Source: Cycas panzhihuaensis (Eukaryota > Plantae > Cycadophyta). From it: a stretch of 64,000 nt of DNA. How positions within the stretch are numbered: the first letter of the stretch is position 1; each line of letters opens with the position of its first letter. The position numbers and the translations under genes were made by a program. Location of the stretch: contig CM041465.1 of NCBI GenBank assembly GCA_023213395.1, forward strand, positions 217,999,741 through 218,063,740, written 5' to 3'. The notes under the pieces were generated by a model. It saw only the letters and a program-made list of their open reading frames with translations. It was not told the DNA's origin and did not search any database. Positions 5,073 to 29,302 of the stretch are shown one piece after another.

Positions 5073-5074
<2 letters not shown>

Positions 5075-5140
<66 letters not shown>
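5075..5140. repeat. (AT)n microsatellite in the Copia A leader
   Basis: Pure AT run; an equivalent run lies at 28481-28510 in Copia B. Confidence 0.97.
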
Positions 5141-5143
<3 letters not shown>

Positions 5144-5896
5144 TAAATAAAAAAGAAAAGAAAAATGTAGGCAGATCCGATGAGTTTGTTAAATTTATAA
5201 AACAAAATGAAATTTAAAAATCAAATGGGGTCCGTGGGGGAGGTAAGGTTGAAACCCTACTTGGTAAACCCGTGGCGGTGATGTTTCTCCTTTGCAGATC
5301 GATTGAAGAGGAGCAGCGAGGAGAGAAGATGGATCTTTTGCAGGTCATTCCTCTACATTTGTTAAGGCGAGATGGCTAGGGATCTCTGGTTCTTTCACGC
5401 TTGCAAATCTTTTTCGAATGCATCTTCTCTTTGATAATAAAAAACCAAGGACGTTGCCAAGGGAACCCAAGGCCACGACCAGCACGAACTTGCTTTCTGC
5501 CAAATCCTGCATGCTTCCCTTTGTTTCATGAGGTCTCATGGATCGTTACATTCCGTTCGATGTTTGACTATGCTTTTGCTACTATCAACGGAGAAAAATC
5601 TCTGGTATTTACAGGCAGAGTCCTAATATTTGCAGACACAGCCTTAATATTTGCTAACATAACCCTACAAGCAGCTAAGGCAGACTATTGATGGAAGCTG
5701 ATATATTATGGATGCAAATGATACACACTGGGATTATTATAATGATTAGATTAGGCATAATCCTCCCCCAATGGTTGTAACCACTTGTAACAATAGATGG
5801 TTATAACTCACTATAAAGAGAGGATACAAACAAAAGCACTTGTTCTGGATATGACAAATAACAGTCCAGTATTTATGGGAAACAACCCACTATCAA

Positions 5897-6624
5897 CATG
5901 ATGAAAGTGTGTACATAGCCAAGCTTGCTAAGCAGTCAGAGCGCTATGAGGAGATGGTAGAGTATATGGAAAAGGTATCTAAGATAGTGGATGTGGAGGG
6001 ACTAACCATGGAGGATCCAAATCTACTATAAGTGGCTTACAAAAATGTTATTAGAGCACGCAGGAAGAGAGCAAGAGAAATGAAGAACATGTTACAATGA
6101 TAAGGGAATATAGAGAAAAGGTTAATTTAGAGCTTAACAACATTTGTGATAGTATTTTGCACCTTCTTGACACCCATCTTATTCCTTCATCCACATTTGG
6201 TGAGTCTAAGGTGTTTTACCTTATGATGAAGGGTGATTACCATCAGCATCTTGCAGTATTTAAAACAGGAGCTGAGAGGAAGGAAGCTGTGGAAAACACA
6301 TTGCTAGCATACAAGTCTGCTCAAGATATTGCATTGGCAGACTTGGCTCCCACACATCCTATTGGATTGGGGCTTGCCCTCAACTTCCCTATCTTCTACT
6401 ATGAAATTTTGAATTCACCAGATTGAGCCTATTTGTTTTCTAAACAGGCCTTTGATGAGGCAATTACAGAGTTGGATACGTTAGGGGAAGAGTCTTACAA
6501 GGACAACACACTCATTATGCAACTCCTTCATGATAATCTTACTTTATGGACTTCAGATATGCAGGAGGATACTTGAGGTGATGAAATCAAGGAAGCTCCA
6601 AAGCGTGAGGAAGGGGAGGGATAT
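5897..6624 (+). pseudogene. GF14: Processed (intronless) 14-3-3 retrocopy, non-epsilon type, antisense to host Copia A
   Basis: Translates [23 protein letters not shown]...NLL*VAYKNVI...[11 protein letters not shown]...[35 protein letters not shown]...[54 protein letters not shown]. It is continuous across the usual plant intron positions, has three stops, and lacks the ASWRIISSIEQ segment near 6063. Confidence 0.96.
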
Positions 6625-6638
6625 TGGCTCTGATACCA
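6625..6638 (-). promoter_or_regulatory. PBS (tRNA-iMet) of Copia A
   Basis: TGGCTCTGATACCA is the reverse complement of TGGTATCAGAGCCA and directly abuts the LTR end (TG at 6639). Confidence 0.95.
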
Positions 6639-7072
6639 TGTGAGAATAGGTACATGTACAATATCATAGGATTACATAAACTAATATACATAGGTAAAAT
6701 CAGATATTACATATGTACACATGCTGTGATAGGTGGAAAACCACTTCTGAGGAAGAAAAACCACCATCTAAAGCTAAGATTTTATTAAAGAACAGACTAT
6801 ACAACATACCATAAATAATATCACCTATGTATGACAAACTAGCCTTTGAAATAGGCTTTAGACAACCTTCTAGATTCTCAGAACCACCTCCTTGAATCTA
6901 AGAGAAGACATTAATAACAAGAAAGGTTCGTTGAAATGGGCAGTTACACATTTCAACAACCTTTCACATAATAATTAAATAAACTCTAAGCTTTAAACAT
7001 TAGAATCACTTAAATATAAATTTACACATGTGACTTAAATAAAACATAAAAGTAACATTAATAATCCTAACA
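6639..7072 (-). repeat. 5' LTR of Copia A (434 bp)
   Basis: TG...CA ends. The reverse complement shares TGTTAGGA.T.TTAATGTTAC, AACTGCCCATTTCAAC.AACCT, GGTGGTTTT(T)CTTCC..AGAAG..GTTTTCCACC and CATGTGTA..TATG.AAT with 27169-27609 and 33549-33989. Confidence 0.88.
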
Positions 7073-8561
7073 ATTAATATGTGGTCATAAGCCCAAAAAT
7101 TGATATATACCATGGAAAAACTCCTGACATGTTTGGTTGGGTCTTTGGGAGGAAGTGCTATCAAATTTAGGCACTTTGGGAGGATAGGGAGGCAGGTTAG
7201 TCCTTTAGGCCTCTAAGGAAAGAGGTGTTTACCTATGAGCTAAGGGGTCATATAAAGGTAAAGAAGGGGGTGGGCATGGTTGTTTGATCCTGCAATGAGA
7301 ATGATGGGTACATGAGGAGCATGGGTTTCCACTCACTTAATGAGATGAGACCATACTAATGTGCTAGAAAGGAGGATGGGAGGAAGGTGGGTGAGAGGGT
7401 CTCATCCCACCTTGGGGACATGCCCCCTATGTGGGTTGCATATGAGAGTAACAAGAATATAGGGGTACGAGCCTCTCAAGTATAGGAGATATATACAACA
7501 TAGTACATAAAGATGAAGGTGTGGAAAATAGGATGGGGTTTTATTCGTATAGGCCACCTATGGAAGGTGTGACCCCATTAGGATGGAATGAATACACCTT
7601 GTAAGTTGGGAGAGGATTTGCCCCTCCATGCCCCCAAGCTTAGGATGTATACCCTGGAGGTATATATAGGGATGAATCTCTAGGTTGTAGATAGGGACGT
7701 GTGGGAGTGGGTCCCATATGATTTGAAGGATGGGAGGGAAGAGATATTCTAGGTCGAACAAAAGGGGTATGAGCCACAATAGGTATGGCACAGTCATTTG
7801 GATGGGAATAAGCATGCTCACCCTGATTTGGGATATGGATACACCTTGGAATGGGTTTCATGCATGAGGAACATATGAAGCCAACAAGATGGTTAGAGTG
7901 GGCTCTACCATGGATGTAGGAAAAGAATGGGACAGAGTGGGAGGTGTGGATCGAGGTATGGATGGGGTGATGCCATGAAGGTCCTCTAACCACTTAGAGC
8001 ATGGTTAGGTAGTCGTGGCTTTGAAGCATTGCCGTAGTGCTTCAACCACATTTGTAAGAGGGATTCTTGCTTGCTCGTACAAGGTGGGACCCATAAGATG
8101 ATCTTCATGGGAGCTCTCACTAGGGTGAAAGCTTTCCATGGAGGAATATTAACCTACATCGTGCGTAGGGAAAGGGTGGAATTTAGGGTGTGTATGGGCA
8201 CTTAGGTAGAAAATAGGATCTTTGCCCTCTTGGGTAAGATCTCATAGAGGGTTAGAAGCTGGGATTTAAGACTCAGAAATATAGGCATGGTATGTCCACA
8301 TTGATGGGTATCCCTCTATCATGGACTCAGAGTTGAATGAGGGGACAAGAGAGTAAGGAGGTTCTTTCGAGACTAGGGGGAGACCATATAAGCAGCGAGA
8401 GAAATGTCACATCCACATCTCACCTAAAAAAGGTTGTAGAAGAAGAGTAACCAAATAGAAACAAAAGTTAGGGTTGCCCAACAAATCATAAAGATGAGGG
8501 AAATGAAGGAGGCTTACTTTAGGAAGATTGAAGGAAAAGTTACAATTTTCCTTACTAGTGG

Positions 8562-8580
8562 GTCCCTAGTATGGTCGCCA
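8562..8580 (-). promoter_or_regulatory. PBS, tRNA-Arg type (Ogre/Tat)
   Basis: Reverse complement TGGCGACCATACTAGGGAC resembles the TGGCGACTCCACTGGGGAC-type PBS. Confidence 0.65.
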
Positions 8581-8815
8581 GTGGAAGCGTACCTCTAGGG
8601 GTTAGTAGGTCATGACTATTCTTACTAGTAATGGATGATAATGAATAGGAGGAAAAAATGTGGCTGAGATACCCTCAAAGGGTGTCCACACATTAGAATG
8701 CAGATTCAAGGACCCACAGTTGTGCATAAGCTACCTCTTTTCTAGGGGTCTTCTTGGTGCAAAACAGAGGGGCTGATAAAGGCATCCTCAGGTTACCAAG
8801 TAGCCAAGGTAGGGC

Positions 8816-9307
8816 TGGTGGAATAATAATAATAGGACTATGCTCTGATACCAAATGATGGAATATAAAGTTTGCAAGACTATGCTCTAATACTAAATGA
8901 TGGAAAATATACTAGCAAGGAGAACAGGTCAGAACATATATTAAATAACCATAAACCAATATTGCATCAATACATCAATATGTCACAATCACAATAGCAT
9001 AAAGAACATGAAAGCCTTGTTGTTCAATCCATTGTAGCAATAATGAGCATTACAAATCTCCTCAAAGGTAGGCGGTGTCTAAAAACACCAGGGTTGTACA
9101 CCCCATAACATTTATAGTTTTGGAGGAGGAGGGAAACTCCTCAACCCCTGAATTCAAATTAATAATAGAATAATACTAACTTAACTCAAATGAAACTAAC
9201 CCAACTTACCTTAACTTACCTTGATATGTTGAGCATCACATGTCTAAATTGAGGTGCACAATCCTGGTAGGTAAGAGGGAGTTGAGTAATGACATTACAC
9301 TCCAACA
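8816..9307 (-). repeat. 3' LTR of element C, with two embedded PBS copies
   Basis: Direct repeat of 13753-14244. GCTCTGATACCA at 8842-8853 and a degenerate copy at 8884-8895. Confidence 0.96.
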
Positions 9308-9354
9308 TTCTACCCCTTAATATCAGCACGAACACTTGTATCTTTTCCTTGAAC

Positions 9355-10041
9355 TTATGGAACTGGTACTTGAAAAAAACCTTTGAAATGCTGATCTTGA
9401 TCTTTATCAACTCTTCTCACCCTTATGGTCACATATATCTCTTTATCATAGAATGATGTAGGAAGACTATAGGTCGATGAAACTTGATGCAAATGTAGAT
9501 GAATAGCTGTAATTTGGACTTTGTCAACAGGAACATTATGAAGGCTTTGAACTTGAACTTTTGTAATCTTTATACTTTGAACAACTGTCATATCATCAGG
9601 TTCATTCTTCGTTATGTTATAAGGTTCATCTTCATGATGCTCCCCCTCAAATGGAGGATCAAATCCTTGTGCAACAAGGTGGTCATGCATTTGATATGAA
9701 TCCTCATGGTTGTTGTCGTCATGATCTATCTGCTCACACTGCCTCACATGCTCATCAAAAGTTTCATCAAATACATTGGGGGTATCTCCCCCATAAATGG
9801 AAATCAATAAATCCCAAACAAACTTAGATATTGTTAATTCAGAAACCAGTGAAAAAACATCATCAGTCATAGTGCAAAATAATAAACCTAAAACTTTATT
9901 ATCTTTTCTAAAATTGTCTTTAATGCTAAGGTCACATTCATGTTATAAATACTTTAAAAGATCATGTTCAATAAAGTAAGTTTACATGGTGTCATACCAT
10001 AGTGAAAAGTTATGGCCATCGAAAATGGGGAATTGTGCCAT
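9355..10041 (-). pseudogene. gag: Truncated Copia-type gag (DUF4219/UBN2-like N-terminus)
   Basis: MAQFPIFDGHNFSLWYDTM*TYFIEHDLLKYL*...KDNKVLGLLFCTMTDDVFSLVSELTISKFVWDLL, in frame with ORF 9355-9870. Two TAA stops, probably from CAA. Confidence 0.75.
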
Positions 10042-12404
10042 TTTGAAAGCAATGTGATCAATAAGAAAATAATGATGCCTTTCAAAGCAAACTTAAAACC
10101 TCTTTTTCACTTATGCAAAACTAAAATAAACTCTTGAGAATGAAATATAAAGAGTTTTCAAAAAATGCCAATTTCTCAAATGAGTAATGTAAATCTCCAA
10201 TATAAAAAATTTCCTTTTTATATAAAAAATAACTTTTCTTTGAGAAAAATATATATATTGCCTTATGAACAAATTCTGGTTTAAAACAACTTAAAATGCT
10301 TGTAGAAAGATCAAGTAGAAGCCTTGAGTAAACAATGAGATATGAACTAGAATTTTCTTTAAAAAATTTGAAAGAAGACAAGCTTATTAGGATGTACGTA
10401 TATGCTCAACTTTAACAGCTTGAAAATTATATTGAATAATGTCAGAATAACTTAAGATTCTACCAATATGTAGATTAATAAGGTGTGAATCCAATGAAAT
10501 AAATGGTTTTGAAAATGGGTACCAATAAATTATGATTTGAATGAGGTAAAGGTATGGATCTCCTTATGGGGCTTAACAGGAGTAGGGTAGTCAAAATTAC
10601 ATAAAATTACTAATTAACCTTTAGAAAAAGTTGAACAAAGGATCAAATATTATTTATAAAGTAATCAATGTTCTTTCAATTGAAAATTTTTGAAAAATAT
10701 GTTAAAAAAAGGTGTAAAAGACAGTAGATTTGGGGCAATAAGGTACCTCAACTTTGACTGATTTGAAATTTAGGAAGATAATGTCAAAATATATAAAACA
10801 ATATGTGAAAATGAAGAGAAATGAGTCAGATTCCCAACGAAGCTAACGAAATTGAAATCTAATAAAAAATGAGAAAGTTATAGTGAAAAATGTAACAGGT
10901 ATTTTTATGTAGGATGTTAGCAAACAGACAAAAACAACTAAATTCCTTGTTTCAGCGATTAAAATATTAATGAAGGTGAACTCAAAAAATTGAAGTAAAA
11001 AGTGGGTATTCAAGTCTATACAACGTAGATAATTATAGAGGTAATTTGGGCAAAATACTATTTACCAGAAATAAATGACAGCCAGTTCTAAAAACGATTT
11101 GTTAAAAATGCAAAAAAAGCTGAAATTTTGAAAGTATAATGTTAAAATGGTCGAAACAAGGTCAAATTGGCACCAAATTGGTCTTATGACCAACAAATCG
11201 GTACGTAAAATTTCTGATCTATTGGAGTAGGTTTCGTCTGAAACCGATGCTCCAACGAGAAGTTATGGCCACAAAAGCACTAATAACTCTATGAAAAATA
11301 AAATTTTGAAAGGAAAAAAAAAGGTTAAAAGGACTAGATTATTAAAAATAGCTTCTTAAAAATGGGCTCAAGATGGACCGAAATGGATTGAACCCAAGAT
11401 CAGTCAGAGACTAAAGACCTCCGATACCAAAAGGGTGAACTCGCTCGTCGAGAATAAAAGATTATTAAAATCCTTAAAACTGGATTTAAAATGAACATAT
11501 AATAAATAAATATGATTATGAGGAATAAGATTTAATGAACCGAATAATAATAATGCAACAATAATAATGCAACGCAAATATCAAAAAATACAGCGCAATG
11601 TATAAACGCACAAAGAAGCCGTAATAATGAATATAATGATCAAACGGGCAGCCGCAATGGACTGTATGTACAACAAAACAAAAGACGCCTCACAATAATG
11701 GAAGAAGACGTAGTGAATATATAAGCTGCAGAGCCGTAATATGGCAGAACAATGCAAATACATGGACACACACAAAGGCATAATAATGATCAAATATGAG
11801 TAATGAATGGCAACGCATGAACTGAATATGTACAGTCAAGCGCCGATAAACGGGGTAAACGCGATGGGCAATGGCCTGAATATGTACAGTCAAATGGCAA
11901 CGCATGAGCTGCCACCGATTATGAGTGCATTAAAGAAGACGCAAATAGCAAACAACCGTCAAATGCGAGAGGGAAGGCTTACAATATAGCGGACCATGGA
12001 TAACAATAATGACCCAACGGGAGCAAAGGCGACTTGAACAATAACGAATAATCAAACGGCCTCAATAGTGACCGAATAGAAAGCCAAACGGCGTAAGTGA
12101 ATTCAAAGCCAAAGCGGCAATAATGGGCGGCGGGCTTAGCTGCGGGCCGATGGCGCAAAGCCCGAGACGGGAAGAAGGGCCGGAAGGGAGAGCGGAGGCG
12201 GAGCGCTGAAAGGATACACGCAAGCAACATCCAAAACGAAGGCAGCAGAGAGGCAGAGTCACGGAGACGGGGCGCTGAAAGGAGATATACACGCAAGCAA
12301 TAGCTGAAATGAAGGCAGACAGAAATGCCAAAGAGCGCAGGGCTATCGAACGGTGAACGGCACTGTCAAAGAGCTATTAATACAATGGAACTACACCACA
12401 GTAA

Positions 12405-12530
12405 AGGGCAGAGAGCTAGCAGCAAATGCAACCGTAAGTTATGGGCAAAGGATAGAGAGCTAGCAGCAAATGCAACCTTAAGTTACAGGCAAAGGGCAGA
12501 GAGCTAGCAGCAAATGCAACCGTAAGCTAC
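12405..12530. repeat. Three copies of a ~43-bp repeat (AGAGAGCTAGCAGCAAATGCAACC core)
   Basis: Visible direct repeats inside the CpG-rich tract of element C. Confidence 0.85.
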
Positions 12531-13752
12531 GGGCCTTAGGAGAGACGCAGATGCAGTGCAGACGCAAAGACACGCACTAGTAGAAGATGCAAAGATGGAG
12601 GCCGAGGTCTAAACGAAAATGGGCCAGCATGGCACAGAGGCCAATAAATGAAATAAAAAACGGAGGACTGAATGCCAATATGGAAGGCGATCGGAGGATA
12701 TAATAAATGGAACGGTGCAAAGGGCAAGATGCCTTAGCAGAGTACAGGGAACAGAGGTGAAGATAAACAAAATCTCAATGAAGTGATACGAAAAAGGGTG
12801 CAATACTATCTCAGATAGAAATACTAAAGATGTTCAAACTAAATAGGGAAGGCAGACAAAAAGCATATATTGAAGATTAACCGAACAAAGCAAAAAAAAA
12901 TATATATATAAAAAATTATTTATTTATATGTTGAAAATCAAAAGGAACAAAGAACTTGGTTCCCGTATGATTGTGCAAACTTCTGAGCGGGAGAACTTCC
13001 TTCACGGTAGATGAAATTCTGATCCATCTTCTCCAGTGGATAGGTGAGCTCGCCAGAATCTCAACAAGCAGTCATATAGATACGTTTCACCAGATGTATG
13101 AGCAACTGCAAACGTATTTGTAGCAGGCTTCTTCAAATTTCTAAGTCCATTCTTCAGTATATAGATCTGTTGTAGATGCTTCTCTGGATGACTGAATATG
13201 CCCAAAAAACTGTAGATTTGTAACAATCTTGAAAATATAGTCAGAAAATATGATGAAAAAATGTAGATTTGAGCTAAATGTAGCATAAAATGGTGAAAAA
13301 ACTTGATACAATAGGCAGATTTATAATAAAAATAGTAGATCTGAAGTAACAAATTGTAGATCTTTAAAGAAAACTTAATCTGCAAAAAATATCAAATAAG
13401 TAGACAAAAAACTTGTAAACTATCAAAATATATGATAAATTTGTAAATCTGAAGAGAAAATAACTTGAATATGAGAATAAAAACTTGAATGTATATAACT
13501 TGCTGCTAAAAATCCTTTGTAGATCTGCACAAATCTGAAAATAGATCTCAGTAATATTTGTTGAACCAGAAATATAGCTTAATAATAATCAAAATCTACT
13601 GAAATAATATGTAAAACTTGTTGAAAATCTTCAGAAAATAAATATAGTTAATATATCTTGCTTGTAAAAGGAATTTGTTGTAGAATGCAGTAGATCCTGT
13701 TACTCTTCTTCAAAACTTCAGCAGGTCAGCAATCGCCTGCTCTGATACCAAA

Positions 13753-14244
13753 TGATGGAATAATAATAGCAGGACTATGCTCTGATACCAAATGATGGAA
13801 TATAAAGTTTGCAAGACTATGCTCTTATACCAAATGATGGAAAATATACTAGCAAGGAGAACAGGTCAAAACATATATCAAATAACCATAAACCAGTATT
13901 ACATCAATACATCAATATGTCATAATCACAATAGCATAAAGAACATGAAAGCCTTATTGTTCAATCCATTGTAGCAATAATGAGCATTACAAATCTCCTC
14001 AAAGGTAGGCGGTGTCTAAAAACACTAGGGTTGTACACCCCATAACATTTATAGTTTTGGGGGAGGAGGGAAACTCCTCAACCCCTGAATTCAAATTAAT
14101 AATAAAATAATACTAACTTAACTCAAATGAAACTAACTCAACTTACCTTAACTTACCTTGACATGTTGAGCATCACATGTCTAAATTGAGGTGCACAATC
14201 CTGGTAGGTAAGAGGGAGTTGAGTGATGACATTACACTCCAACA
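13753..14244 (-). repeat. 5' LTR of element C
   Basis: Preceded on the plus strand by GCTCTGATACCA-AA. Embedded PBS copies at 13779-13790 and 13821-13832. Confidence 0.96.
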
Positions 14245-16567
14245 AGGGCTCTCCTACCCTTAGGGTGAAAGAGGGTGAAAACGATCTCCTTCTAAAGAGG
14301 AGATAGAAGAGCAATGATTCCTTGCAGAAGGGAACCCTAAAGATGAGAAGAAGGGGTGACAATTATTGGTTTGCTTGGCTTCTACTTGTTCATTTATTTG
14401 TTAGTTTGATGATAAGAAAGAGTGAGTGTAGGTAAGAGGATTAGCCGCTTACGGTTTGTTGCAAGTGGGGGTCCAAGGTAGTTGGTTTAGTTTATAAAGG
14501 ATTACCCTTAAGAAGCTAAGGTTTGCAATGTTAGGCTTGGAGAGGTGAGAAAGTGTTGCAATCATTTAGTTGCAGCTAAGTTTTAGGTTTTTCCTTGGGT
14601 TGTGAGAACAAGGCAGGTAGGTTGATGTTTATTTGCTTGTTGTAAGGTAGGTTTATCTCTAATCAATAGTTATTATGATGTTCAATTATTGTAACTTTTA
14701 TGATGCAAATAAAATATGATGACAAAGTAAACTAACTATTCTCCCTTGCTCTTAATTCTTTTTCTCTTAGAAGGGGGAGGTTTTTCAAGAGGGCAAAAAA
14801 AAAGGTAGAATATGATATCTATCTACTTGCAACTAGTGTTTCTTCTTATACAATAAATGGATTGGAGTTCTACAATGTTTCTCTCTTGGGCAGGAAGGGG
14901 CTTAAAGTGCTTTTAGAATCCTTGCATAAATATTATACACAAGGCTAGAAGAAAAGGGAGAGATGCAAGCTTTTCCTTTCATATGCAAAGGGAAAGAGGG
15001 GAGTGGTTTGTTTATACTACGCTTCCTTTCTATGTGAGATGCACAAACATATGAGCAAAGCAATGAGACACTTTCCCTTTCCTTTTAGGGCAAAGGGGTG
15101 GTTAGGAAGGCAAGGAGAGAAAAAAAATGAGTGGAATGTACCCGGTTCCATGACATTCGATGCAGTAGCCCAACTCTTCTTCATGCGTCCTCTTTGCCAG
15201 TAGCTCTGCTTCTCTTGTCGTAATGAATGTTGTTAACGAACCTTGAGTGGGGGTTCCTTACCTTCCCTAAGTTTGAATAAACAAAACAAAAAAGGAGAGT
15301 AGAAAAAGGGAAAGTGCAACATAAACCAAAACAAGAAACAATGTTACCTCTTAGTGAAAAATCACTTTGTTTATGAATGGGTCTGACTCCACCTAAATTA
15401 CATAATAGATAACTACAAACAACAAATATTCATATATGCATGCCAACTTACTAATGAAAGATATTTGGAATGTTTGTTTAGTTGTGTAATGCTAGAATAA
15501 GATCTCAAGTAATATTTTACTATTTAGTATGACATACAACATGCAACATACGGGAGAAGCAAGAGGTAGAAAGGAGTGGGAGTGTTACCTCAGAATGGTG
15601 AGTTCTACTATAATCTAGGTTTCTCCAAAATGGATGAATAAGACCTCACAATCATGTGGTAGTTTCTTAGGGGTAAAAGATCTTGAGGTGGGGTGATAGA
15701 TCACCCAAGAAGGAAGCTATAAGTTTTGCATCCAAGTAATACACTAGTTGAGGCATGAATAAGAGGGATATCAACTAGTGTTGAGGAGGGGTTACCCTAG
15801 TAGAAGGGGGCTTTTAGAGTCATAACTCAAGTACAAAGCCCTTCCTATAATCTCCCCTAGCCACTTCTATCCTCTCCTCACCAAAACTAATGATTTGGAG
15901 GATGAAACTAGAGGTTTGATAGTAGGTAGAGGGGTTGCCTCTAAGATTCCTGGTAGACTTACTCCTAATGAGCATGAAAAGGGGTGTCTAAATCTGAAAA
16001 TGGTTAAGAAGCACATTAGTTAATCGAAAGAATAAAATAAAACTTAGGTGTTTGGTAACCAAAATCACAACAAAATGGCTTACCTTTTGGATGAAAGAGA
16101 GAATAGTGCAGGTGAGAGTTCTTAGCTTGAAAACCAAAAGTTTTAGAGAATAATTTTAAGTTTTTGGGGAGGAAACCAACTCTCTTTTATAACTTGATAG
16201 CTTGGGGCTAATCTAATATAGTTGTTGAGCTTGATCCTGCTAGCTTTCCCTTTTTGAAGTACTATTCTACATGCAGGCTTCCAGTAGATCCCAAGAGGAT
16301 GGAAGTTTGTGAGAGAAATATGAAGTTTTGCAAAGAAAATAAGTTGAAGAAGAGAGGAAATCCATTTGAATTTAGGTTTTTATGGTTTAGGTGAGGTCTT
16401 GGGACCATTAAGGATTGATCTGGGCTGGTCCCAAGGCCAGGGACTATGTTAGGTTTACAATAAATATGATTTTAGCCATTTTTGGTCACATTTAAACTTA
16501 TAACAGTCTCACCATGAATTAATTCATGGCACCACTAATATATTAGCAGTGTTGCTAATATATTAGA

Positions 16568-16712
16568 GGGGCACAATAATCAGAGTGGTGCAGACAAAAA
16601 AGGGAGTAGGGAAATAATAGGTCAATGGATCTTAATATTAGTAGGGCACAATAATCAGAGTGGTGCATATAAAAAAGGGAGTAGGGCAATAATAGTTCAA
16701 TGGATCTTAATA
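16568..16712. repeat. 75-bp tandem duplication
   Basis: GGGCACAATAATCAGAGTGGTGCA...TCAATGGATCTTAATA occurs twice. Confidence 0.9.
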
Positions 16713-18881: not shown

Positions 18882-18907
18882 AGAGAGAGAGAGAGAGAGA
18901 GAGAGAG
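18882..18907. repeat. (AG)n microsatellite
   Basis: Pure AG run. Confidence 0.95.
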
Positions 18908-19465
18908 TCATTGTTTAATATTTTGAGTCACGTCCTTATTTTATGTCATTTGTCATTATGTTGGTAGATACTTTATAGCCTATAGAGGAAAATGTAAGTC
19001 CTTAAAAATAAGAGTGTAAGCTTATAGAGGTAAATTATGAGGCCATAGTGCCCTTGTAAGGTCGTAGAGTTATTTCATCATATATATTCTAGCTATAAAT
19101 ACTGAAGAGTTGCTCATATTATCCTATATTGGCAAAAGGTGGGACTCCTTTCTTCATGCTACTCTTGCATTCAATTATCAGCTCACCTATTCGACCATGT
19201 AGGACAATGTGCTTCCAAGGTATAGTTGACTTGGTGTTGATTGCACCATGTACATAAATGATCATCTTAACTAACTGATAGTAGTAATGACTATTTATCC
19301 ATGTAGTCTGGTGGATGGAGTTCACTTCATATGGACATCAATAATAACTTATGTTTCTTTGTAGTAACTTGATCCAATAGATTTAAATACCTAAATTGTA
19401 TATTGATATGATATTTTTATTTGATGTAATTATTTATTATAGGGGAGAATATTGGATGTAATATC

Positions 19466-22400
19466 TGTTATGTACCCAATCTCCTTTCAATACATCTACC
19501 TTGCCCCTCTCTCTCTTTGATGTATCTTCTTCCCCTTCTTCTTTTTCTCCTTCTTCATCTTCACTAGTCTCTTATTGAAATTATCCTACATGTATTAGTC
19601 AAGTCTCCTTCTTCATCTTCACTAGTTTGTTATTGTAATTATCCCACATATATTAGTTAAGAGGGATGAGCAGCCTTAGTAGCTATATATATAATCTCCA
19701 CTCTTGTAGAGGACATCTTTGAGCATTGAGATATTGTGTATTGGAGGTTGCCCCCTTAAAGTGGCCTAATAATATAAAGTGATCTTGTGCTTGTGTAATT
19801 TTCTTGAGAAGAATTTAACTTTCATTAGAGGATTGGGCAATTGTTAGAGAAAAGTTTATTCCAAGTGGTATCAGAGCAAGATTAATACATGACCTATGAG
19901 CAAGTCAAAGGTATTGAATAATCAATTTTTTTTCCAATTAGCTTTCATTCCCATCAGTATTTATTCACATTTTAATTTCTACTTAGTTACTTCTACTTTT
20001 TAGGGATAGATAACACTATAATCAAGTAACTACTCTAACATTTGCATTGAGTAACCTTTTTTTGTATTTAAATAGAGACCCTATGCTAGGAGTTTATAAA
20101 TATTATGAGGATTTTCTTTTAGGGCTAAATGCATTGTGGCTTTTCTGGCCCCTGCATGAAGGACTAGAGATCACACTTCTTAACCAAGCCTTAGATAAAA
20201 CTTAGCTATAAAGTCATGTCCATGTACCTATGGATATATAGGAGGACACCCTAGGTAGGCCTTCCTAGTATAGGTAACCAATCAACCATTTGTAATTTGT
20301 AGTACATTAAAAGAAGTTACCCTTGGGAAGTTACTCTCTATGTACCCTAGAGATAAGGTAGTATGGTTGCATAGTACATCATTAGCCTCTGTAAGTTTAT
20401 AATATTTATTATTAGAATTAATATATTAGAGAGCCTATAAACCAAAAAATCTCAACCTAGTATACCTGGTCAATCTGTTAGTGGTCTATGTGCACTTAAT
20501 CAGTCAATAAGTTAGTCACCATCAATCTATAAAATTTAATGTGTTTAGCCAGTTTGTTGTCAGTTCATGTGTACATAGTCAGTCAGTTAGTGAGCGACCA
20601 AACAAGAAAAAAAGTAAAAAAAAACAAAAGAAATAAAAAAAGTCAATTAATTGATTGTAAGCAATAAAATAAAAAATAAAAATCCATATTGCTTAATTAT
20701 AAAACAAGCAGGACAATAGTCTAAAAACATCCAGTAAGGGCCTAACATCCTTAAGAACCCATATTTATAAAACAATATAGAGTTAAGGTCGAGAAAGAAA
20801 ATGGCCCTAAAAATCAACCTCGATTAAAGCATCAAACTCAATGATATAGTTGTCTCATTAAGAGGGGAAATATATGTCAAGCTTTAAAAGGTACAACATA
20901 TAGTAAATAATTTGGCCTTCCAAGTATCTAATACGATTGCCCTACTAAAGAAAAATTTCACTAACAAAGATAACCAAGTTAAGGAATATGACTACAACCA
21001 TAAAGAGAAAAAGAAACTTAATTTAGATGATACATCTCAATAGGATATCATAATGAGGGCATGGATGATGATTACTATGATAATAGATGAGGGAGGCTAA
21101 CCTTCCTTCCAAAAGTAGATCTCCAAAACTTTGATGGCAATGATGTTCAAACTTAGGTATCACAAATGGAACAATACTTTTCCCTTCACCAAGTCCCAAA
21201 AGATAAAAAGATATGAATAGCCTCTTTGTATATGGAATCTGAGCCTTACCAATAGTACCAGTGGGTGAAGAAGAAGGTTAGTGGACTTAATTATGATTGG
21301 GACTATTTTATTAAGGACCTTGAGACCTAGTATGATAATATTTAGGATAATGACTACTTTAGTTAGCTCACAAAGATTTAATAAGATAACACAATTTTAG
21401 AATATACCTCTACATACTAGCATCTCTCCATATGATTTGAGAACTTGAGTGAGGAACAAATACTAGAACTATACATTAGTGGACTTCAAGATGAGATTAA
21501 GTAAGAACTTTGTCTCTCAAATCCTACATAAATCACTAAGCTATAAGAATAACATGCCATATTAAAGCAAAAAATAAGGCATCTAGATAATCCATGTGAC
21601 CATATATAAATAAGAGAATACCATCACATACCCCAATCATGTCACACTCACCAATTGTTTAACAAATAACTACATAAGAAGTTGATGAGAAAAGGTTAAA
21701 AGGGCTATGTTTTAGATGCAACCAAAAATGGCAAAAGGACCATCATTGTTTTAAAAAATAATTATTTATCATCAAGAACATATAGGATGAGGAACAAGAG
21801 GAAGAAAATGTTTTAGAACAACTATATGAACATGTTTCAGAATTACTAGAATCACTAATAGATGATGATGAAGATACTACAACCATCTTAGTCCATACCT
21901 TAGCCAGAATTATAACTCCTCAAACTCTTAAAATCATTTAGTATATCAAGAAAAAGTGAGTGGTTGTCTTAATTGACTCAGGAAGCACCCACAATTTCAT
22001 CAATAGGAAACTAACTGAAGAGCTCAATTGTTTTCCATATCTAGTAAAAAACTTCCAAGTCATGGTCACTAATGGGAGAACACTATCTTGTGGTAGAAAA
22101 TGCCATAATATCAAGCTTACCATAGGAGAGTCTTATTTATCTACTTCAATATTTCTAATTCCTGTCATAGGTGTCGATGTGGTTTTAGGAGTTTAATGGT
22201 TGAAGATACTTGGTACCATTCAACTTAACCTACAATAGTTATTCATTTGATTTAACTTAGAAGGTCAAGAGTACCAACTTAATGGAATCACCCTACCCCT
22301 ATCACAATTCGTCAACTCATATAGGATGGAGAAGTTGATACAAAATGGAAGAATATGGCTAATTGCAAGGTGTTATCTAACATAGGTCAACTGCCCTTAA

Positions 22401-23854
22401 TTAGAGAAGATACAACTTATAATAATCACCTGTTATTAGAATTATAAGAAGTTCTACTCAACCGTCCTTAGGTCTTTGATGAAGACCGCAAGGGACTTCC
22501 ATCATAACAAGAGGAGGAACATGCCATCGAGATTGTCCCTAGGAGTCACCCACCTAACATATGACCATATGAGTATTTGTACCAATAAAAGAATGAAATT
22601 AAAAGGTTGGTATATAAATTGCTAGATGCAAGGGTCACCTAAGAGAGTAAAACTGGCTTTTCTACCCTAGTCATACTAGTTAGAAAAAAGGATGGGTCAT
22701 TCCAGATGTGTGTTAATTATAGGGAGTTAAACAAAATCACAATCAAGGATAAATTCCCTATTTTAGTGATTGATGAATTACATAGTGCAACTATATTCAC
22801 ATCCTTGGATCTTTGGTCTAGCTATTACTAAATGAGGGTCAAGATAGAAGATGTGTATAAAATAGCCTTTCAAACCCATGAAGGTCACTATGAATTTTTA
22901 GTCATGCCCTTTGGCCTTACTAATACACCAACCATAAAAAATTATATCATGTAGACTTTAAGGCTATAAGCAATAGAGGAGCATCTACAACAACAAGCTA
23001 ATATACTTTGGATACTAAAAGATAACCTCAACTTGGCTCAATATAGGATGAAGTAACAAGTAGATAAAAAATGAAGTGAGTGGGAGTTCCAACTAGAAGA
23101 TGAGGTTTACATCTGCCTACAACCTTATAAGAAACCATCAATTAAAGGAGATACCAAACACAAGATTCTGCCAAGATTCTATAGGCCATATTAGGTCCTC
23201 AAGCATATGGGTGAGGTAGTTTATGCCTTGGAGTTACCAATAACATCCAAGCTCCATAATATCTTTCATGTATCCTATTTGAAAAGGTTCATTAGACAAC
23301 AACTACAGGCATAGACCGAACTCTACTTTTGGATGAAGAGGGAAAACTCCAATTGGTACTAGAATAAATCCTTAAGGTAAGGATGTGAAACTTACATTCT
23401 TGATAGATCTAGGAGTACCTCATCAACTACCATAAGAAGATTCAACATGGAAGGGTGAGAAGATTGTTTAGGAATATCTAGAATTACTTAACCTTTGAGG
23501 ACAAAGCTTTTTAAAGGGGGATTTGTTATATATCTAACCCTCTTTTAATACATCTACCTTTCTCTTCTCTCTCTTTGATGTATCTTGCTCTCCTTCTTCA
23601 TCTTCACTAGTCTCTTATTATAATTATCCCACATGCATTAGTCAAGAGGGATGAGTGACCTTAGTAGCCTTATATATATATATACTCTCCACTTTTGTAA
23701 ATGAAATCTTTGAGCATTAAGGTATTGTGTATTGGAGGTTTCCCCCTTGAAGTACCTTAGTAATACAAAGTGATCTTGTGCTTGCGTAATTTTCTTAAGG
23801 AGAATTTAATTTTCATTGGAGGATTGGGCAATTGTTAGAGCAAACTCCATTCTA
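19466..23854 (+). mobile_element. Ty3/Gypsy chromovirus (Reina-like), internally deleted
   Basis: LTRs 19466-19863 (with an internal ~55-bp duplication) and 23524-23854. TSD ATATC at 19461-19465 and 23855-23859. PBS TGGTATCAGAGC 19866-19877; PPT AAAGGGGGA before 23524. Confidence 0.93.
20870..23500 (+). pseudogene. gag-pol: Degenerate Gypsy gag-pol: gag, PR, partial RT, INT C-terminus and chromodomain-like tail
   Basis: VVLIDSGSTHNFI (PR) and LVRKKDGSFQMCVNYRELNK...VMPFGLTN (RT). It then jumps near 22935 to KDNLNLAQYRMK...LQPYKK...YALELP. Confidence 0.88.
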
Positions 23855-26800
23855 ATATCCAATTACATTCTAGTCCCATTTACACTCTCTCTTGTATTAT
23901 TGTATTTTATATTCATGGTTACTTTGAGATGTGTGCCACCTTGAAAAGTGTGACAGCATATAATGGTTGACCATTGAGGATTCTCACATGGTGAGATGTT
24001 ATATAAGTATATATGTTATCTTTCTCATAATTTAAAATTTAGTCATTCTTCCGTTATACACTACATCTATTTCTTATGCATACTTCATTCTTATTGTGTT
24101 TATTGTTTATCATTCACTCATTATATTCTTTATTCTTTGTACTTTATTAGGTCCACTTATATTACTTCTATCTTAATCCATCTTTGTGGTATCACAACTA
24201 TACCATAATATCTATAATATTGCCAACTAAGAATTTATGTATGAGATAGAGAGTTGATGTTTAAATAGATAATGGATGAAAAACATTTTATAAAATAGTG
24301 AAATCATCAAATACTGAATCTTTTTTGATATTATACAAAGAAGTTTTGATGCGATTTTGATGACCTATGCTAACACTTAACAACATATAAAAGGCTTGTT
24401 TAAGAATATTCTACTATTATTTTGTAAATTGATAGAAATACAAAAGAACAAGTGATGGATTGAAATTTCCAATTGGAAAAGTAGAATAGGAATTATTTAG
24501 GACATTGTAGTAAAGTTGTAACAAGATTTTAAAAGATCTCATTAAAGATAAGACAACATCCAACATTGGTAAAATTATTTATTAGAGTGTTATGTTGAAG
24601 TTTATTATTATTGTATATCCATAGGAGAGTTAGGGTTATATGCTTGAGGTACAAAGTATGCAAATTAAGGACACATGCTTTACATATGGGAGTAAGCACA
24701 ACTATGAAGTATCCAATATCATTGGTGATACTCAATTCCTTATGAGTGGTCATATCATTGTTTTTAGTTATGTCTAATTATGTATGATAATTATACTACT
24801 AATTTCATGTGAACTTTGAATTGGTTAGAATACCATTACCATAATAACAAATAAAAAATTTATAGTTTAGATATATTTTAATAAATTACCCAATATATAA
24901 TATCATATATTTGAATGTTTCACTTATTTCTTTGTATAAAATTAACAGGCTATGATTCTATAGTGGTCATTACTTCTATGCATTAATATTTAATATGATA
25001 ATTATATGTTTTTTTTCCTAATATATCAAGCTTCCTTGTTAAGATAATTTTTACTTAATTGATGAACCAATGGTCTTGGGATATTATTTTGTAATAAGAA
25101 TAAACATTTGATAATGATAAGACAATGTTTAAGAGGCTAAATTATAGGTGTAAAAGATGAAGAATAGATGACCTTTACATAAATCCAAGACCAAAACTAA
25201 GTGAACTAGACTTAAATAGGGATAATGTGTAAAAGTATATTAGCTAGTATGAATGTAAAATATGTCATCTACCATTAAGAATTATACTATGCTAGAAAGG
25301 TGATGAAATGGCATGATGGTAAAGAGATGATAAAAAATGTTTATAAAGTAAATAGAAAAGCATAACCATGTAAGTGATTAAGTGATTTGAATGACTAGAT
25401 TAGTGGCACCTAGATTAAGATGATTTAAATTATGATGACTTGAAATTCAATGTAAATACAAAAGACAAGTGAATTAATTAAGGAGAAGGAATAAGGGATG
25501 TTATTCATAATCTAGATATATGGCAATGGCAAAATGATGAGATGGTGAAGTCTATAATGATTGGGTGGGTGACAAATAAAGTCAAGATCATAGTACTTAA
25601 AATTTAATAAGGGACCATCTTATAAGCGACTCCAAATGATAGTTTTAGCATCTAAAGGCATTTTAGCATCTCAAGGCACTCAACTTTAATTTTGATAAAT
25701 GTTTGACATGCTTTAATAATTAAGAGTAATAATAAGAAACTTTGATCTTTCTTTAAGGTATTAAGGGCATTATATGGATTCTTGTAGATGGTTAGGGTTT
25801 AGTCCTAATGTTATGAGGGCTTTAGTTCCATGTGGTTAGGTTTAATATAAATAGATTATAGGTTCATGACCCATCACAATAACAAAAAGAAGAGAGAATA
25901 GAGTGATATTGACTTGAAATCTTGCTAGCCAAATCAATGTAGAGTTGATGTAGTAAAATCTTTTGATGTAGAAACACAGATACTTTGCTTTCAATTTGTA
26001 AATATGTATGCACAAGATAAGAAGATCTATATATGTAAAATTAGCTTTCCTTTATCAAAGGTAGTTAGATATGATAACTTATGTTTATAGAAAGTGATAT
26101 TTTCTATTAATTATAAAAAATATATAATTTACATAAATGGCATAAGAAATGTGGCATGCATAGAATCCTCTTAAATAATCAAGAGTAATTTTTATAAAAA
26201 GATAAAGTGCATCAAGCAAGTTATTTTAGCAATAAGTGGAAACACTAGTATTGCACTAAGACTTCTTCTCCATGAACACTTAAAGAATGAGGAGGTGGAA
26301 TGGTCATGAAAAACTAGAAATATTCACCAATCCTCCTTGTCTTAGTGTGGAAAAAGGAAAGTTCTTCTAGAAGTATAATTCCCTTTTAAGGATTGCAAGT
26401 TTGATTTTAGGCCTTATAATTAAAGAACTTCCTACTTATTTAATGAGTATTACATCTATGTATTATTGTAGTGTTGTATTTATTAGGTTAGATGACATAT
26501 TTTAAGCTTATACTTGGGAAATGCATAGTTTCATATATTTTAAATGTTTGTCTAGAAAATGAGTCAAGTTTGGTTATTAAAACATGAGAAAGGAAGTAAT
26601 AATTGTATATATCTATACTAGTTAAAGAGGAATTATGTTCACTTCTTATTGAGATAGCTATGGATTCCCTTCAATTACACCTAAAGGGAGTCTTTATCTA
26701 AATGAGTGATGATGTATTTCCTACCTTTGTATACTATGGATAACTTGTTTTGCATGCACCTTAGTCCATGCCAATTTGGAGTTTCAGAGGATGTTAAATA

Positions 26801-27624
26801 AGGTTTCTATGACCTCCTTTAGTTTCACTTAAAGGGATGTAAACATCATATGTAATACTCTCTCCCTTTAGTTTGACTTGAACGGATCTACATCCTTATA
26901 ATTGCATGGACTAAAAAAGCTATAGGCAACTAGAAAGGTAGCTAAGCATGGGATAAATTAGTTGAGGTTCAAACTACTTGATGATTATGATATAATAACC
27001 TCTTTATGATGTATAAATATTCTTAATGTAATTAAGAATGAGAAATAAGCCTTCTCTTCCTAAAGATTGTATCTTTAGATATTTCATAGTCAAAGTTTGA
27101 TCATATTGATTCATTAATTTAGGAAGGGAGTTATTGGGAGAATTGTTGACTTAATCCATGGAATGATTTGTTAGGAATGTTAATGTTACCTTTTTATATC
27201 ACATGTCAGAAATGTAAACTTAAGTCACTAAGGTCAATTTGATAAAGTTTATGTTTAATTATTGTTTATTATGTAAGTTCATTAAAATGAGCAACTGCCC
27301 ATTTCAACAAACCTCTCACTCCTTAAAAAGCTCCTCCTAGAATCTAGGAGGTGATCTAGTTGTCAAAAGTATGTCTTAAGGCTATTCTGAAGGTATTCTC
27401 TAGTATGAAGGAGGTATATTAGTCTAGTCAGGTTCTTATGTTATGTGCATATTTTCTTAGCTAATAGATCAACTTTAAGAGGTGGTTTTCTTCCCTAGAA
27501 GGCGTTTTCCACCTTCCAATCCATGTGTATCTATGCAATGTCTATTTGTGTATATTTTGTACTTTTCTTTTCATCCTAATGATATTGCATATGATACCTA
27601 TCTTCTACACGATATTAGAGCAGT

Positions 27625-28185
27625 TGGATTCAACTTGCTATAGTTGTGATAGCCTTTTAACCCATGCTCTCTCCCTTCCCAATCCCAAAATCTCTTTCAT
27701 CCCTTTTGCCTATTGATGTCAAATTCTCCACATCCAGACCCTCATTGGAGGGTTTAACCAAATTGTTTAGGACAATGAGGGTTTCTGCAGGCTTGGTCTC
27801 TGTCGAAGGTTTCGAACCCCCAAGGGTTTTAATGTTCTTCTACAATTCGAGGAGCTTCTCTTTTATGTATTCCCCCAACTGGGGCTGTACATTAGACGAA
27901 ATCAAAGGAGGAAGATTAGCTCTATCTTTGCTGACTGTGATCTTGTGCACATAACCATGAGTTAAACCAAGCCTCATTTTCTTTTTCATTTTCTGTGGAC
28001 CCAATTCAGTACCATCCTCTTCAGAATCAAAACTCAGTAAGTTTTGAACTAAAGGCCTAGACCCCAATTTTTCTTTAGGCTTGTCTTTTCGATGGCTAGA
28101 ATTGAGGCTGATGAGTTTGTCATTGTCTGCAAAGCTAAGGAGATTCAAACCATGAGAGCTGACAAACAAAGATGAGATGTATTAG
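27625..28185 (-). pseudogene. ILP1: Captured fragment of ILP1 (GC-rich sequence DNA-binding factor / NTR2-like), N-terminal region, antisense to Copia B
   Basis: LLSFADND...LLSFDSEED...HKITVSKDR...SSNVQPQLGEYIKEKLLEL*KNIKTLGGSKP...ETLIVLNNLVKP...FGIGKG matches recalled plant ILP1 motifs (LLSFADDE; SSNVxPQAGxYxKEALxELQKNTRTL; EPxxVLKGLxKP; GIGKG). Identified from memory, not by search. Confidence 0.85.
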
Positions 28186-28478
28186 AATATCTATGTATGA
28201 GGAGCCTCTGCAATGGTTTGCTGGCTGCCATATTGGCTCTACCCTCACTGCTGCTCACCCGAAAGAGAGCATCCCTTAAGACTTGAACTGAAGTTACAAA
28301 CAAACAACATAAGAGCATTTTACCTACGTCATCATTACCCCTAAGGAGTTATTGAACCTCTCATCACCACCAAATTGCCATTCAAAGCTGTAGAGCCATT
28401 GTTACTGCATTGACTTGAATACACAAATAAACAGGTAGGGTTTCCTAACCCAAATAAGATGCAAAATAAAATTAAATA

Positions 28479-28515
<37 letters not shown>

Positions 28516-29302
28516 TTCAATTAAACTAATTAAATGTTTTACCCCCCCTTTAACATTTAATCAAACGATTTAGTATAACATGAAAGAGATATAGTCTGGT
28601 CCCCCCCCCTTTTACATTTTAATAATTAATTCATGATGTTTAATCAATAATTTAACCCCCATATTTTCTTAAAAAAAAAAAAAAAAACTTTATAAGTGAT
28701 ATAATTAATTAAATCAAACTTAGTAAACCTTAGGATAACTTAATCAATTTAATCCTAATAATCAATTAAATCAAAGTGAGAACACTTCTCCACTTTTGAT
28801 TCAATTTAATACCTCTCCTTTTATTAATCATTTATTTTCTTTTAAACCTTTTAATTTAAATGCTAATATATAGTTATAAACCACCCACTTATCCATCATT
28901 TAATAAATCCATAGTAAAATTTTATGATTTCTTAAATTAATTTGATTTCTTACATTAAATTCCCTACATCCTCTTAATAAAATCATTAATCAACTTAATA
29001 CCTTTTTAAAAAATTAAGCTACATTAATAACAAGGGGAATATTTATCTCTAATTTTTTTTTTTATCTAGGGGAGGGCATCTACACAAATTATCTAAAATA
29101 ATAGTAATGATCTTAAGCACTTTTATTCATTTCTCTACCATAAATATCTGATTAAACATCTCTGTTAATTATCAATGGTAAATTAAAGATTTACTCTAAT
29201 GTTAGTGTTTTTTTTTAATCATTCCTTGCGACTTTATTTCACCTATATCTCCTTGTCAAAATTATTCAATTTTATCTCTAAACAACATTCCTAATTCTCA
29301 AA

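What the first reader, a model, noticed from the sequence alone, without database searches (positions are those of the whole stretch)
5265..28440. A Copia family with a host-mRNA capture site at the PBS: two members, two different antisense host genes
Seen: element A (LTR 6639-7072, minus) and element B (LTR 27169-27609, plus) have homologous LTRs and the same leader layout: PBS, variable block, GTAGGGTTTC motif (5252-5261 on minus, 28435-28444 on plus), (AT)n, AT-rich tract, gag. The variable block starts at the PBS and is non-homologous between them: a spliced 14-3-3 cDNA in A and an ILP1-like coding fragment in B, both antisense to the element. Established: LTR elements can acquire mRNA by template switching, and the usual minus-strand switch leaves the insert sense to the element. 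Inference: the same site and the same antisense polarity with different genes suggests a recurring, site-specific acquisition mechanism. Every element transcript would then begin with antisense RNA to a host gene. That could act as camouflage against silencing or as a source of trans-acting siRNAs. Two cases are suggestive, not proof.
Basis: partly seen in the sequence, partly recalled or inferred. Interest (0 to 1): 0.93.

Follow-up and report, generated by a model that had tools for sequence, protein, structure and literature searches.

The report
Antisense host cDNAs behind Copia primer site
Two distantly related, long-dead plant Copia retrotransposons each carry a backwards copy of a different host gene starting right at their tRNA primer site, which points to a repeatable copying error during plus-strand DNA synthesis rather than to chance.

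Summary
The core observation holds. Two Copia LTRs (6639-7072 minus; 27169-27609 plus) align at 66% identity. Each is followed by a tRNA-iMet primer binding site (PBS) and then directly by antisense host coding sequence. Element A carries an intron-free 14-3-3 copy. Element B carries the N-terminal part of an ILP1/GCFC gene (51% identity to Amborella ILP1, E 4e-29).

The "same leader layout" does not hold.
- The gag/pol downstream of A belongs to a Ty3/Gypsy element with its own PBS at 3438-3457.
- The 10-mer GTAGGGTTTC is one of 21 ten-mers the two leaders share, which is within chance.
- The AT-rich tracts are not demonstrably homologous.

B is a complete but decayed Copia with a target-site duplication (TSD) and LTRs 89% identical. 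Only A's LTR, PBS and cargo are visible.

In both cargos the 3' side of the host message touches the PBS and the 5' part is kept. My best reading (about 0.5): plus-strand strong-stop DNA, stalled after copying the tRNA primer end, jumped onto a co-packaged host mRNA and copied it toward its 5' end.

No evidence bears on a silencing or camouflage role. Unchecked scan notes report at least ten similar cases elsewhere in this genome. I found no paper describing PBS-anchored antisense capture.

The parts
6639..7072 (-). Copia LTR of element A (TG...CA), 5' LTR by its adjoining PBS
   Evidence: 66% identity to both LTRs of B; sequence read
6625..6638 (-). PBS of A, TGGTATCAGAGCCA, 14 nt complementary to the 3' end of initiator tRNA-Met
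   Evidence: The tRNA 3' end is from memory; the 20-nt PBS of the neighbouring Gypsy agrees with it
5875..6624 (+). Intron-free, decayed 14-3-3 copy, antisense to A. C-terminal codons abut the PBS. N-terminus and a candidate ATG at 5875-5877 are retained. No stop codon, 3' UTR or poly(A)
   Evidence: PF00244 hits at E 3e-41, 3e-14 and 2e-5; tblastn collinear with residues 9-205 of plant 14-3-3; best short homologue 79% identical
5261..5874 (.). Unidentified segment distal to the 14-3-3 copy. The + frame 5218-5688 has a single stop in 157 codons
   Evidence: no homologue found
5251..5260 (-). GTAGGGTTTC, which contains a telo-box octamer AAACCCTA on the + strand
   Evidence: not significant on its own
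4540..5250 (-). (AT)n at 5062-5149 plus an AT-rich tract (23% GC). Ownership is uncertain: leader of A or outer part of the Gypsy LTR. The lower boundary is a guess
1..3457 (-). Ty3/Gypsy element cut by the window start: PBS tgatatcagagccaggtttc at 3438-3457, then gag, protease, RT (RVT_1) and integrase zinc finger. Its 5' LTR lies above 3463 and its start is undetermined
27164..27168 (+). Left target-site duplication of B (TGATT)
   Evidence: the right copy TGATC is at 33990-33994
27169..27609 (+). 5' LTR of element B
   Evidence: 89% identity to the 3' LTR, K2P 0.12
27610..27621 (+). Decayed PBS of B (cgatattagagc; three transitions from TGGTATCAGAGC)
27622..28231 (-). ILP1/GCFC-like N-terminal coding fragment, antisense to B. 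Firm homology spans 27665-28157. Candidate ATG at 28229-28231. The 3' side faces the PBS
   Evidence: phmmer E 1.5e-11 to a 946-aa Amborella ILP1 with GCFC and NTR2 domains; tblastn E 4e-29; extension of the homology
28232..28444 (-). Possible 5' UTR of the captured message, ending in GTAGGGTTTC (28435-28444 on +)
   Evidence: inference from position
28473..29303 (+). (AT)n at 28473-28511 and an AT-rich tract with degenerate repeats of about 60 nt, up to the gag ATG near 29304
29304..33539 (+). Decayed Copia gag-pol (gag_pre-integrs, integrase SH3-like domain, RVT_2; integrase before RT)
33540..33989 (+). Polypurine tract AAAGGGGGA (33540-33548) and 3' LTR of B (33549-33989)

Best explanation
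B is a complete, old Copia retrotransposon. A is the 5' LTR and PBS of a distant relative. In each, a reverse-transcribed copy of a host mRNA sits antisense immediately after the PBS.

Proposed mechanism, all steps inferred:
1. During plus-strand synthesis the strong-stop DNA (U3-R-U5 plus the copied 3' end of the tRNA primer) stalls at the modified tRNA.
2. Instead of transferring to the minus-strand PBS, its 3' end lands on a host mRNA co-packaged in the particle.
3. Reverse transcriptase copies that mRNA toward its 5' end.
4. The strand then returns to the element's minus-strand DNA in the leader.

This places cargo exactly at the PBS and makes it antisense. It puts the 3'-most captured part of the message next to the PBS, keeps the 5' part of the message, and removes introns.

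The two copies here are decayed relics. Nothing shows that the cargo has a function.
For: Shown:
- The LTRs are homologous.
- In A the PBS is followed at once by host sequence. In B firm host homology starts within 45 nt of the PBS.
- Both cargos are antisense and come from different genes.
- The 14-3-3 copy has no introns, whereas plant 14-3-3 genes have one to six (PMC4960266).
- Both cargos are 3'-truncated inside the coding region yet keep the N-terminal part. This is the reverse of LINE-type retrocopies.
- B has a TSD outside both LTRs, so the cargo lies inside the element.
- No terminal inverted repeats or TSDs flank the cargos.

From the literature:
- Plus-strand strong-stop DNA ends after copying 18 nt of the tRNA and must then transfer (PMC8599865).
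- Cargo transduced by the usual route is normally sense (PMC7264820).

Leads only: at least ten unchecked notes of antisense host fragments behind a PBS elsewhere in this genome.
Against: - There are only two cases in the window, and A is incomplete. Its Copia interior, if any, lies beyond a Gypsy element and the window edge.
- The parent genes were not available, so the exact junctions, any microhomology and the claim that the distal ends coincide with mRNA 5' ends are untested.
- Four other LTR elements in the window have long leaders without recognisable host cargo.
- No experimental precedent for this jump was found in my literature searches.
Confidence: 0.5

Rival explanations
1. Locus A is not a full element with cargo. 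It is an orphan chimera: free plus-strand strong-stop DNA (LTR plus PBS) primed on a 14-3-3 mRNA, and the LTR-PBS-cDNA product was patched into the chromosome by repair. The enzymatic error is the same as in the main explanation, but the product differs.
For: No Copia gag-pol or second LTR of A exists in the window, and what follows is a Ty3/Gypsy element. An unchecked note describes a similar 'LTR + PBS + antisense exon' retrocopy elsewhere in the genome (s1-824941).
Against: B shows that such cargo can sit inside a complete element with a TSD. The rest of A may simply lie beyond the nested Gypsy element and the window edge.
Confidence: 0.2
2. Two unrelated DNA-level accidents that happen to end at the PBS. 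Examples are a deletion or illegitimate recombination joining the PBS to a nearby processed pseudogene, or a retro-pseudogene or gene-carrying DNA transposon inserted into the leader.
For: The elements are old and rearranged. A has a nested Gypsy element, and there is a roughly 37-nt deletion in the 14-3-3 copy.
Against: - No poly(A), TSD or terminal inverted repeats surround either cargo.
- The cargos are 3'-truncated, unlike LINE retrocopies.
- A rough inferred estimate: two random breakpoints within 45 nt and 0 nt of the PBS end in a leader of about 1 kb, both antisense, have odds of order 1e-4 or less.
- A solo-LTR insertion into a pseudogene is excluded by the PBS and by unequal flanks.
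Confidence: 0.15
3. The antisense leader cargo is kept because it is useful to the element or the host. Each transcript would start with antisense RNA to a host gene, giving camouflage from silencing or a source of trans-acting siRNAs.
For: By structure, any LTR-driven transcript of B would carry antisense ILP1 sequence after R-U5-PBS. Epigenetic conflict after gene capture by transposable elements is discussed in PMC13477047.
Against: Both cargos are decayed, with stops, frameshifts and only 51-79% protein identity to the best homologues. No expression or small-RNA data could be obtained. No amplified copies of the ILP1 cargo were found among short predicted proteins, though this is a weak test.
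Confidence: 0.1
4. Ordinary minus-strand template switching, as in Bs1 or LTR-mediated retroposition, but onto a natural antisense or read-through transcript of the host gene.
For: Minus-strand switching at microsimilarity is the documented route of capture (PMC5131818, PMC13317346).
Against: The 14-3-3 cargo is spliced in the sense of the gene, so its template was the sense mRNA. Minus-strand switching onto sense mRNA yields sense cargo at arbitrary internal positions and usually replaces ORF sequence (PMC5131818). B keeps its gag-pol.
Confidence: 0.05

Closest known systems
Bs1 of maize and retroviral-type transduction by LTR retrotransposons
   Same: Host gene fragments sit inside an LTR element between its LTRs, were acquired through RNA and lack introns. 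Several fragments can stack (PMC13317346, PMC7264820).
   Different: Bs1-type cargo is sense and lies in the coding region. Here the cargo is antisense, starts at the PBS, and in B gag-pol is retained.
LTR-mediated retroposition (Tan et al. 2016, PMC5131818) and yeast Ty1 retrosequence chimeras
   Same: Reverse transcriptase switches template between element nucleic acid and a co-packaged mRNA. The result is a partial mRNA copy flanked by element sequence.
   Different: The described switches occur during minus-strand synthesis, at microsimilarities anywhere in the element, and replace internal ORF sequence. No PBS anchoring or antisense polarity is reported.
[quoted passage not shown]
   Same: This is the step I invoke. 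[quoted passage not shown]
   Different: The known failure is read-through into more tRNA, which blocks completion. A jump onto host mRNA is my inference and is not documented in the papers I found.
Antisense additional ORFs of plant LTR retrotransposons (Grande gene23, RIRE2, Retand)
   Same: Antisense coding sequence lies inside an LTR element (PMC7264820).
   Different: Those ORFs lie between pol and the 3' LTR, are family-wide and have no host homologues. Here the sequences are copy-specific fragments of recognisable host genes behind the PBS.
LINE-type processed pseudogenes
   Same: An intron-free copy of a host mRNA.
   Different: No poly(A) tail and no TSD. The copies are 3'-truncated rather than 5'-truncated and are joined to a PBS.

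Membership tests
Ty1/Copia LTR retrotransposon (element B) | Two LTRs with TG..CA ends flanked by a 5-bp target-site duplication | tested here: met
   LTRs 27169-27609 and 33549-33989 are 89% identical. The TSD is TGATT/TGATC. The 3' LTR now ends TA.
Ty1/Copia LTR retrotransposon (element B) | PBS after the 5' LTR and polypurine tract before the 3' LTR | tested here: met
   cgatattagagc at 27610-27621 (three transitions from the tRNA-iMet PBS); AAAGGGGGA at 33540-33548
Ty1/Copia LTR retrotransposon (element B) | Domain order gag - integrase - RT, with RVT_2 | tested here: met
   gag_pre-integrs at 30745-30891, SH3_retrovirus at 31308-31682, RVT_2 at 32001-32261
Ty1/Copia LTR retrotransposon (element A) | LTR homologous to a Copia LTR, followed by a PBS | tested here: met
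   66% identity to B's LTRs, E 1e-24; perfect 14-nt PBS
Ty1/Copia LTR retrotransposon (element A) | Copia gag-pol and a second LTR | tested here: not met
   Within the window the downstream genes are Ty3/Gypsy (RVT_1, Integrase_H2C2) and no second LTR exists. The rest may lie outside the window.
One family in the 80% sense (A and B together) | At least 80% identity over at least 80% of the LTR | tested here: not met
   65-66% identity, K2P 0.47-0.48
RNA-mediated gene capture by an LTR element | Host fragment lies inside the element | tested here: met
   In B the cargo lies between LTRs with the TSD outside. In A only the LTR-PBS side is visible.
RNA-mediated gene capture by an LTR element | Introns of the parent gene are absent | tested here: inconclusive
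   Met for 14-3-3, which is collinear with the protein over 5900-6573, while plant 14-3-3 genes have one to six introns (PMC4960266).
RNA-mediated gene capture by an LTR element | Microsimilarity between parent mRNA and element at the junctions | not testable with these tools
Bs1-type / minus-strand transduction | Cargo in the same sense as gag-pol | tested here: not met
   Both cargos are antisense.
LINE-mediated processed pseudogene | Poly(A) tail, TSD and 5' truncation | tested here: not met
   The 14-3-3 copy ends in its C-terminal codons at the PBS and keeps its N-terminus. No A-run or flanking repeat is present.
Pack-MULE / Helitron or other DNA-transposon cargo nested in the leader | Terminal inverted repeats or hairpin ends with a TSD around the cargo | tested here: not met
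   No inverted or direct repeats flank 27622-28444 or 5261-6624.

The most novel reading that the evidence does not exclude
In the Copia elements of this genome the end of the PBS acts as a cargo port. Mis-directed plus-strand strong-stop transfer repeatedly writes antisense copies of host mRNAs there, with the newest next to the PBS, giving polarised stacks. Every transcript of a cargo-bearing element would then begin with antisense RNA to a host gene, which could feed small-RNA pathways that affect the element, the parent gene or both.
Probability: 0.12. Interest if true: 0.9.

Novelty: new variant of a known kind. Interest (0 to 1): 0.7.

Why it matters
Gene capture by LTR retrotransposons is known, but it is described as sense-oriented and positionally loose. 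A class of captures anchored at the PBS and always antisense would show that plus-strand transfer, not only minus-strand synthesis, can recruit host RNA. It would give a simple signature (site, polarity, 5'-complete and 3'-truncated cargo) for scoring such events in any genome. It would also identify a natural source of antisense transcripts to host genes. Giant plant genomes hold hundreds of thousands of captured exon fragments (PMC13477047), so this could account for part of that load.

Tried and rejected
I could not fetch the Amborella ILP1 gene to place its introns, nor any other genomic copy.
- The search for homologous proteins found nothing for the 103-aa frame 5380-5688 or for short relatives of the ILP1 piece. 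The length window of that tool makes both blanks weak.
- The protein atlas gave only sub-threshold hits for 5380-5688.
- Pfam on ten pieces from the leaders of other LTR elements and from the flank of A found only a Copia gag and a sub-threshold PH_14 match (E 0.005), no convincing host domain.
- A third Copia (PBS at 39213) has a 1.1-kb leader with no recognisable cargo.
- Rfam and tRNA scans of the whole window were empty.
- Local alignment of the AT-rich tracts gave no collinear homology.
- I rejected the 10-mer as a family landmark after the shared-k-mer control.
- I considered reading it as a host telo-box at the 5' end of the captured messages. The octamer occurs 11 times against 3.9 expected, but this cannot be tested here.
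- All translated searches used stop-free pieces by reference.
Full report
**Anatomy of B**

A self-comparison of the window finds direct repeats at 27169-27613 and 33549-33993, 89.8% identical by BLAST. The K2P distance is 0.12 over 440 sites. Reading the ends gives these features:
- LTRs at 27169-27609 and 33549-33989.
- A target-site duplication, TGATT at 27164-27168 and TGATC at 33990-33994.
- A decayed primer binding site (PBS), cgatattagagc, at 27610-27621.
- A polypurine tract, AAAGGGGGA, at 33540-33548.

The interior has only short open frames. These match gag_pre-integrs, the retroviral integrase SH3-like domain and RVT_2 in Copia order. A Copia-type gag start lies near 29304. B is therefore a complete, old and dead Copia whose leader, from PBS to gag, is about 1.7 kb.

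**Anatomy of A**

The minus strand carries an LTR at 6639-7072 that aligns with both LTRs of B at about 66% identity (E 1e-24 and 3e-18; alignment; K2P 0.47). It is followed at once by TGGTATCAGAGCCA (6638-6625), a perfect 14-nt match to the complement of the initiator tRNA-Met 3' end. I recall the tRNA sequence from memory. The 20-nt PBS of the neighbouring Gypsy element agrees with it.

The minus-strand frames from 3534 to 1 match RVT_1 and then Integrase_H2C2. That is the Ty3/Gypsy order, and the element has its own PBS at 3438-3457. Its 5' LTR lies between about 3463 and an undetermined point below 5250.

No second LTR of A and no Copia gene of A is in the window. The rest of A is either beyond this nested Gypsy element and the window edge, or does not exist.

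**The cargos**

In A, stop-free + strand pieces match Pfam 14-3-3:
- 5855-6028 matches profile positions 2-36.
- 6055-6423 matches positions 60-180 (E 3e-41).
- 6427-6573 matches positions 184-223.

tblastn with Musa and Nicotiana 14-3-3 proteins aligns residues 9-205 to 5900-6453. The only irregularity is about 37 missing bases near 6030-6060. There is no intron-sized interruption, whereas plant 14-3-3 genes have one to six introns, mostly three to five (PMC4960266). The acidic C-terminal tail (GDEIKEAPKREEGEG) reads on to 6624, the base next to the PBS. No stop codon, 3' UTR or poly(A) is present. A candidate start codon lies at 5875-5877.

In B, the 113-aa minus-strand piece 27843-28181 finds six proteins in 1.8 billion. 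The best is a 946-aa Amborella protein named transcriptional repressor ILP1, which carries GCFC and NTR2 domains. tblastn aligns its residues 48-177 to 28157->27750 at 51% identity, E 4e-29, with one in-frame stop. The homology continues through the conserved GIGKGE motif to about 27665, at most 45 nt from the PBS.

Both cargos are antisense to their elements. In both, the 3' side of the host message faces the PBS and the N-terminal part is kept.

**What does not hold**

GTAGGGTTTC occurs only at 5251-5260 (-) and 28435-28444 (+) in the window. The right null, however, is any shared ten-mer between two leaders of about 2 kb. They share 21. Random window pieces share a median of 13 with A's leader, and 13% share 21 or more.

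The (AT)n runs are one of at least four in the window. The AT-rich tracts have the same GC content (23.4%) and an oriented k-mer resemblance in the top 0-1% of GC-matched controls. But they give no collinear alignment, and the shared ten-mers lie on no common diagonal. I treat leader homology as unproven.

The motif contains the plant telo-box octamer, which is enriched in the window at 11 copies against 3.9 expected. It could belong to the 5' ends of the captured messages rather than to the element.

**Excluding simple accidents**

- No inverted or direct repeats bracket either cargo, so a nested DNA transposon or a LINE-type insertion is unlikely.
- A LINE retrocopy would keep the 3' end and poly(A) and lose the 5' end. 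These cargos do the opposite.
- A solo LTR inserted into a pre-existing pseudogene is excluded by the PBS and by unequal flanks.
- A rough estimate: a random breakpoint within a leader of about 1 kb lands within 45 nt of the PBS end about 5% of the time and within 3 nt about 0.3% of the time. Both cargos being antisense adds a factor of 0.25. Two such events by chance are therefore improbable.

**Mechanism**

Minus-strand template switching onto a sense mRNA gives sense cargo, which is the documented pattern (PMC7264820, PMC5131818). For the element's plus strand to carry the complement of a spliced mRNA, starting at the PBS and running from the 3' part of the message toward its 5' end, the plus strand itself must have copied the mRNA.

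The natural moment is the plus-strand strong stop. The nascent strand has just copied the tRNA primer's 3' end, is blocked by a tRNA modification and must change template (PMC8599865). A mis-directed transfer onto a co-packaged mRNA, extension to its 5' end and a return to the minus-strand DNA explains the observed features:
- the site at the PBS;
- the antisense polarity;
- the direction of the cargo;
- the 3' truncation;
- the retained 5' part of the message;
- the loss of introns.

None of these steps is shown here. The model is an inference that fits two loci.

**Context**

Unchecked notes from this scan report antisense host fragments directly behind a PBS at ten or more other places in the same genome. 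The reported cargos include ENKD1/enkurin (twice), ASHR2, PUR4, a 2OG dioxygenase, DSK2, ALMT9 and stacked fragments. I could not test any of these notes.

In this window, four other LTR elements have long leaders with no recognisable cargo. One of them repeats its LTR end plus PBS three times in tandem at 13739-13850, another sign of template slippage at the PBS.

My literature searches and the reviews I read (PMC13317346, PMC7264820, PMC5131818, PMC13477047, PMC5664825) describe capture by LTR elements. None describes a PBS-anchored antisense class.

**Verdict**

The core observation is real and non-random. The proposed shared leader architecture is not supported, and A is not a visible full element. 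The finding is best filed as a new variant of RNA-mediated gene capture with a testable mechanism. The functional ideas remain speculation.

Noticed in passing
window 1-3457 (-), LTR above 3463: Decayed Ty3/Gypsy element cut by the window start. It has a 20-nt tRNA-iMet PBS (tgatatcagagccaggtttc) and a short tandem repeat of GTGCATCAACT-like units in its LTR around 4270-4400.
   Followed up: partly
window 13739-13850 (-), also 8842-8895 (-): An LTR element repeats the unit 'LTR end TTCCATCA + TT + PBS TGGTATCAGAGCA + about 17 nt' three times in tandem, and PBS-like copies recur in its other LTR. This looks like repeated slippage at the PBS. The element has a Copia gag only (9358-9942) and a leader of about 3.8 kb.
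   Followed up: partly
window 5218-5688 (+): A reading frame with a single stop in 157 codons, between the 14-3-3 copy and the 10-mer. It begins after a UTR-like stretch with ATG at about 5329. No homologue was found, so it could be a second antisense cargo or nothing.
   Followed up: partly
window 38500-45000 (+): A third decayed Copia: PBS TGGTATTAGATC at 39213, gag from about 40350, RVT_2-like sequence near 43081. Its 1.1-kb leader is of unknown content. 38547-38770 resembles 26463-26686, next to B, at 74%.
   Followed up: partly
whole window: The telo-box octamer AAACCCTA occurs 11 times against 3.9 expected. One copy (44560-44567) directly abuts another (AT)n run.
   Followed up: no
window 28540-28790 (+): The AT-rich leader tract of B contains degenerate repeats of about 57-61 nt with a C-run followed by TTTAACATTT. 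Similar C-run motifs occur in A's tract (4650-5015, minus).
   Followed up: partly
window 16560-16709 (+) and 62650-62930: A 75-nt tandem duplication (92% identity) and a large compound microsatellite of (AT)n, (ACAT)n and (ATCT)n units.
   Followed up: no
window 19463-23855 (+): An LTR pair (81-88% identical, about 400 nt) with PBS at 19866. The interior is about 3.6 kb and holds Gypsy-like protease and RT remnants (21960-22828).
   Followed up: no
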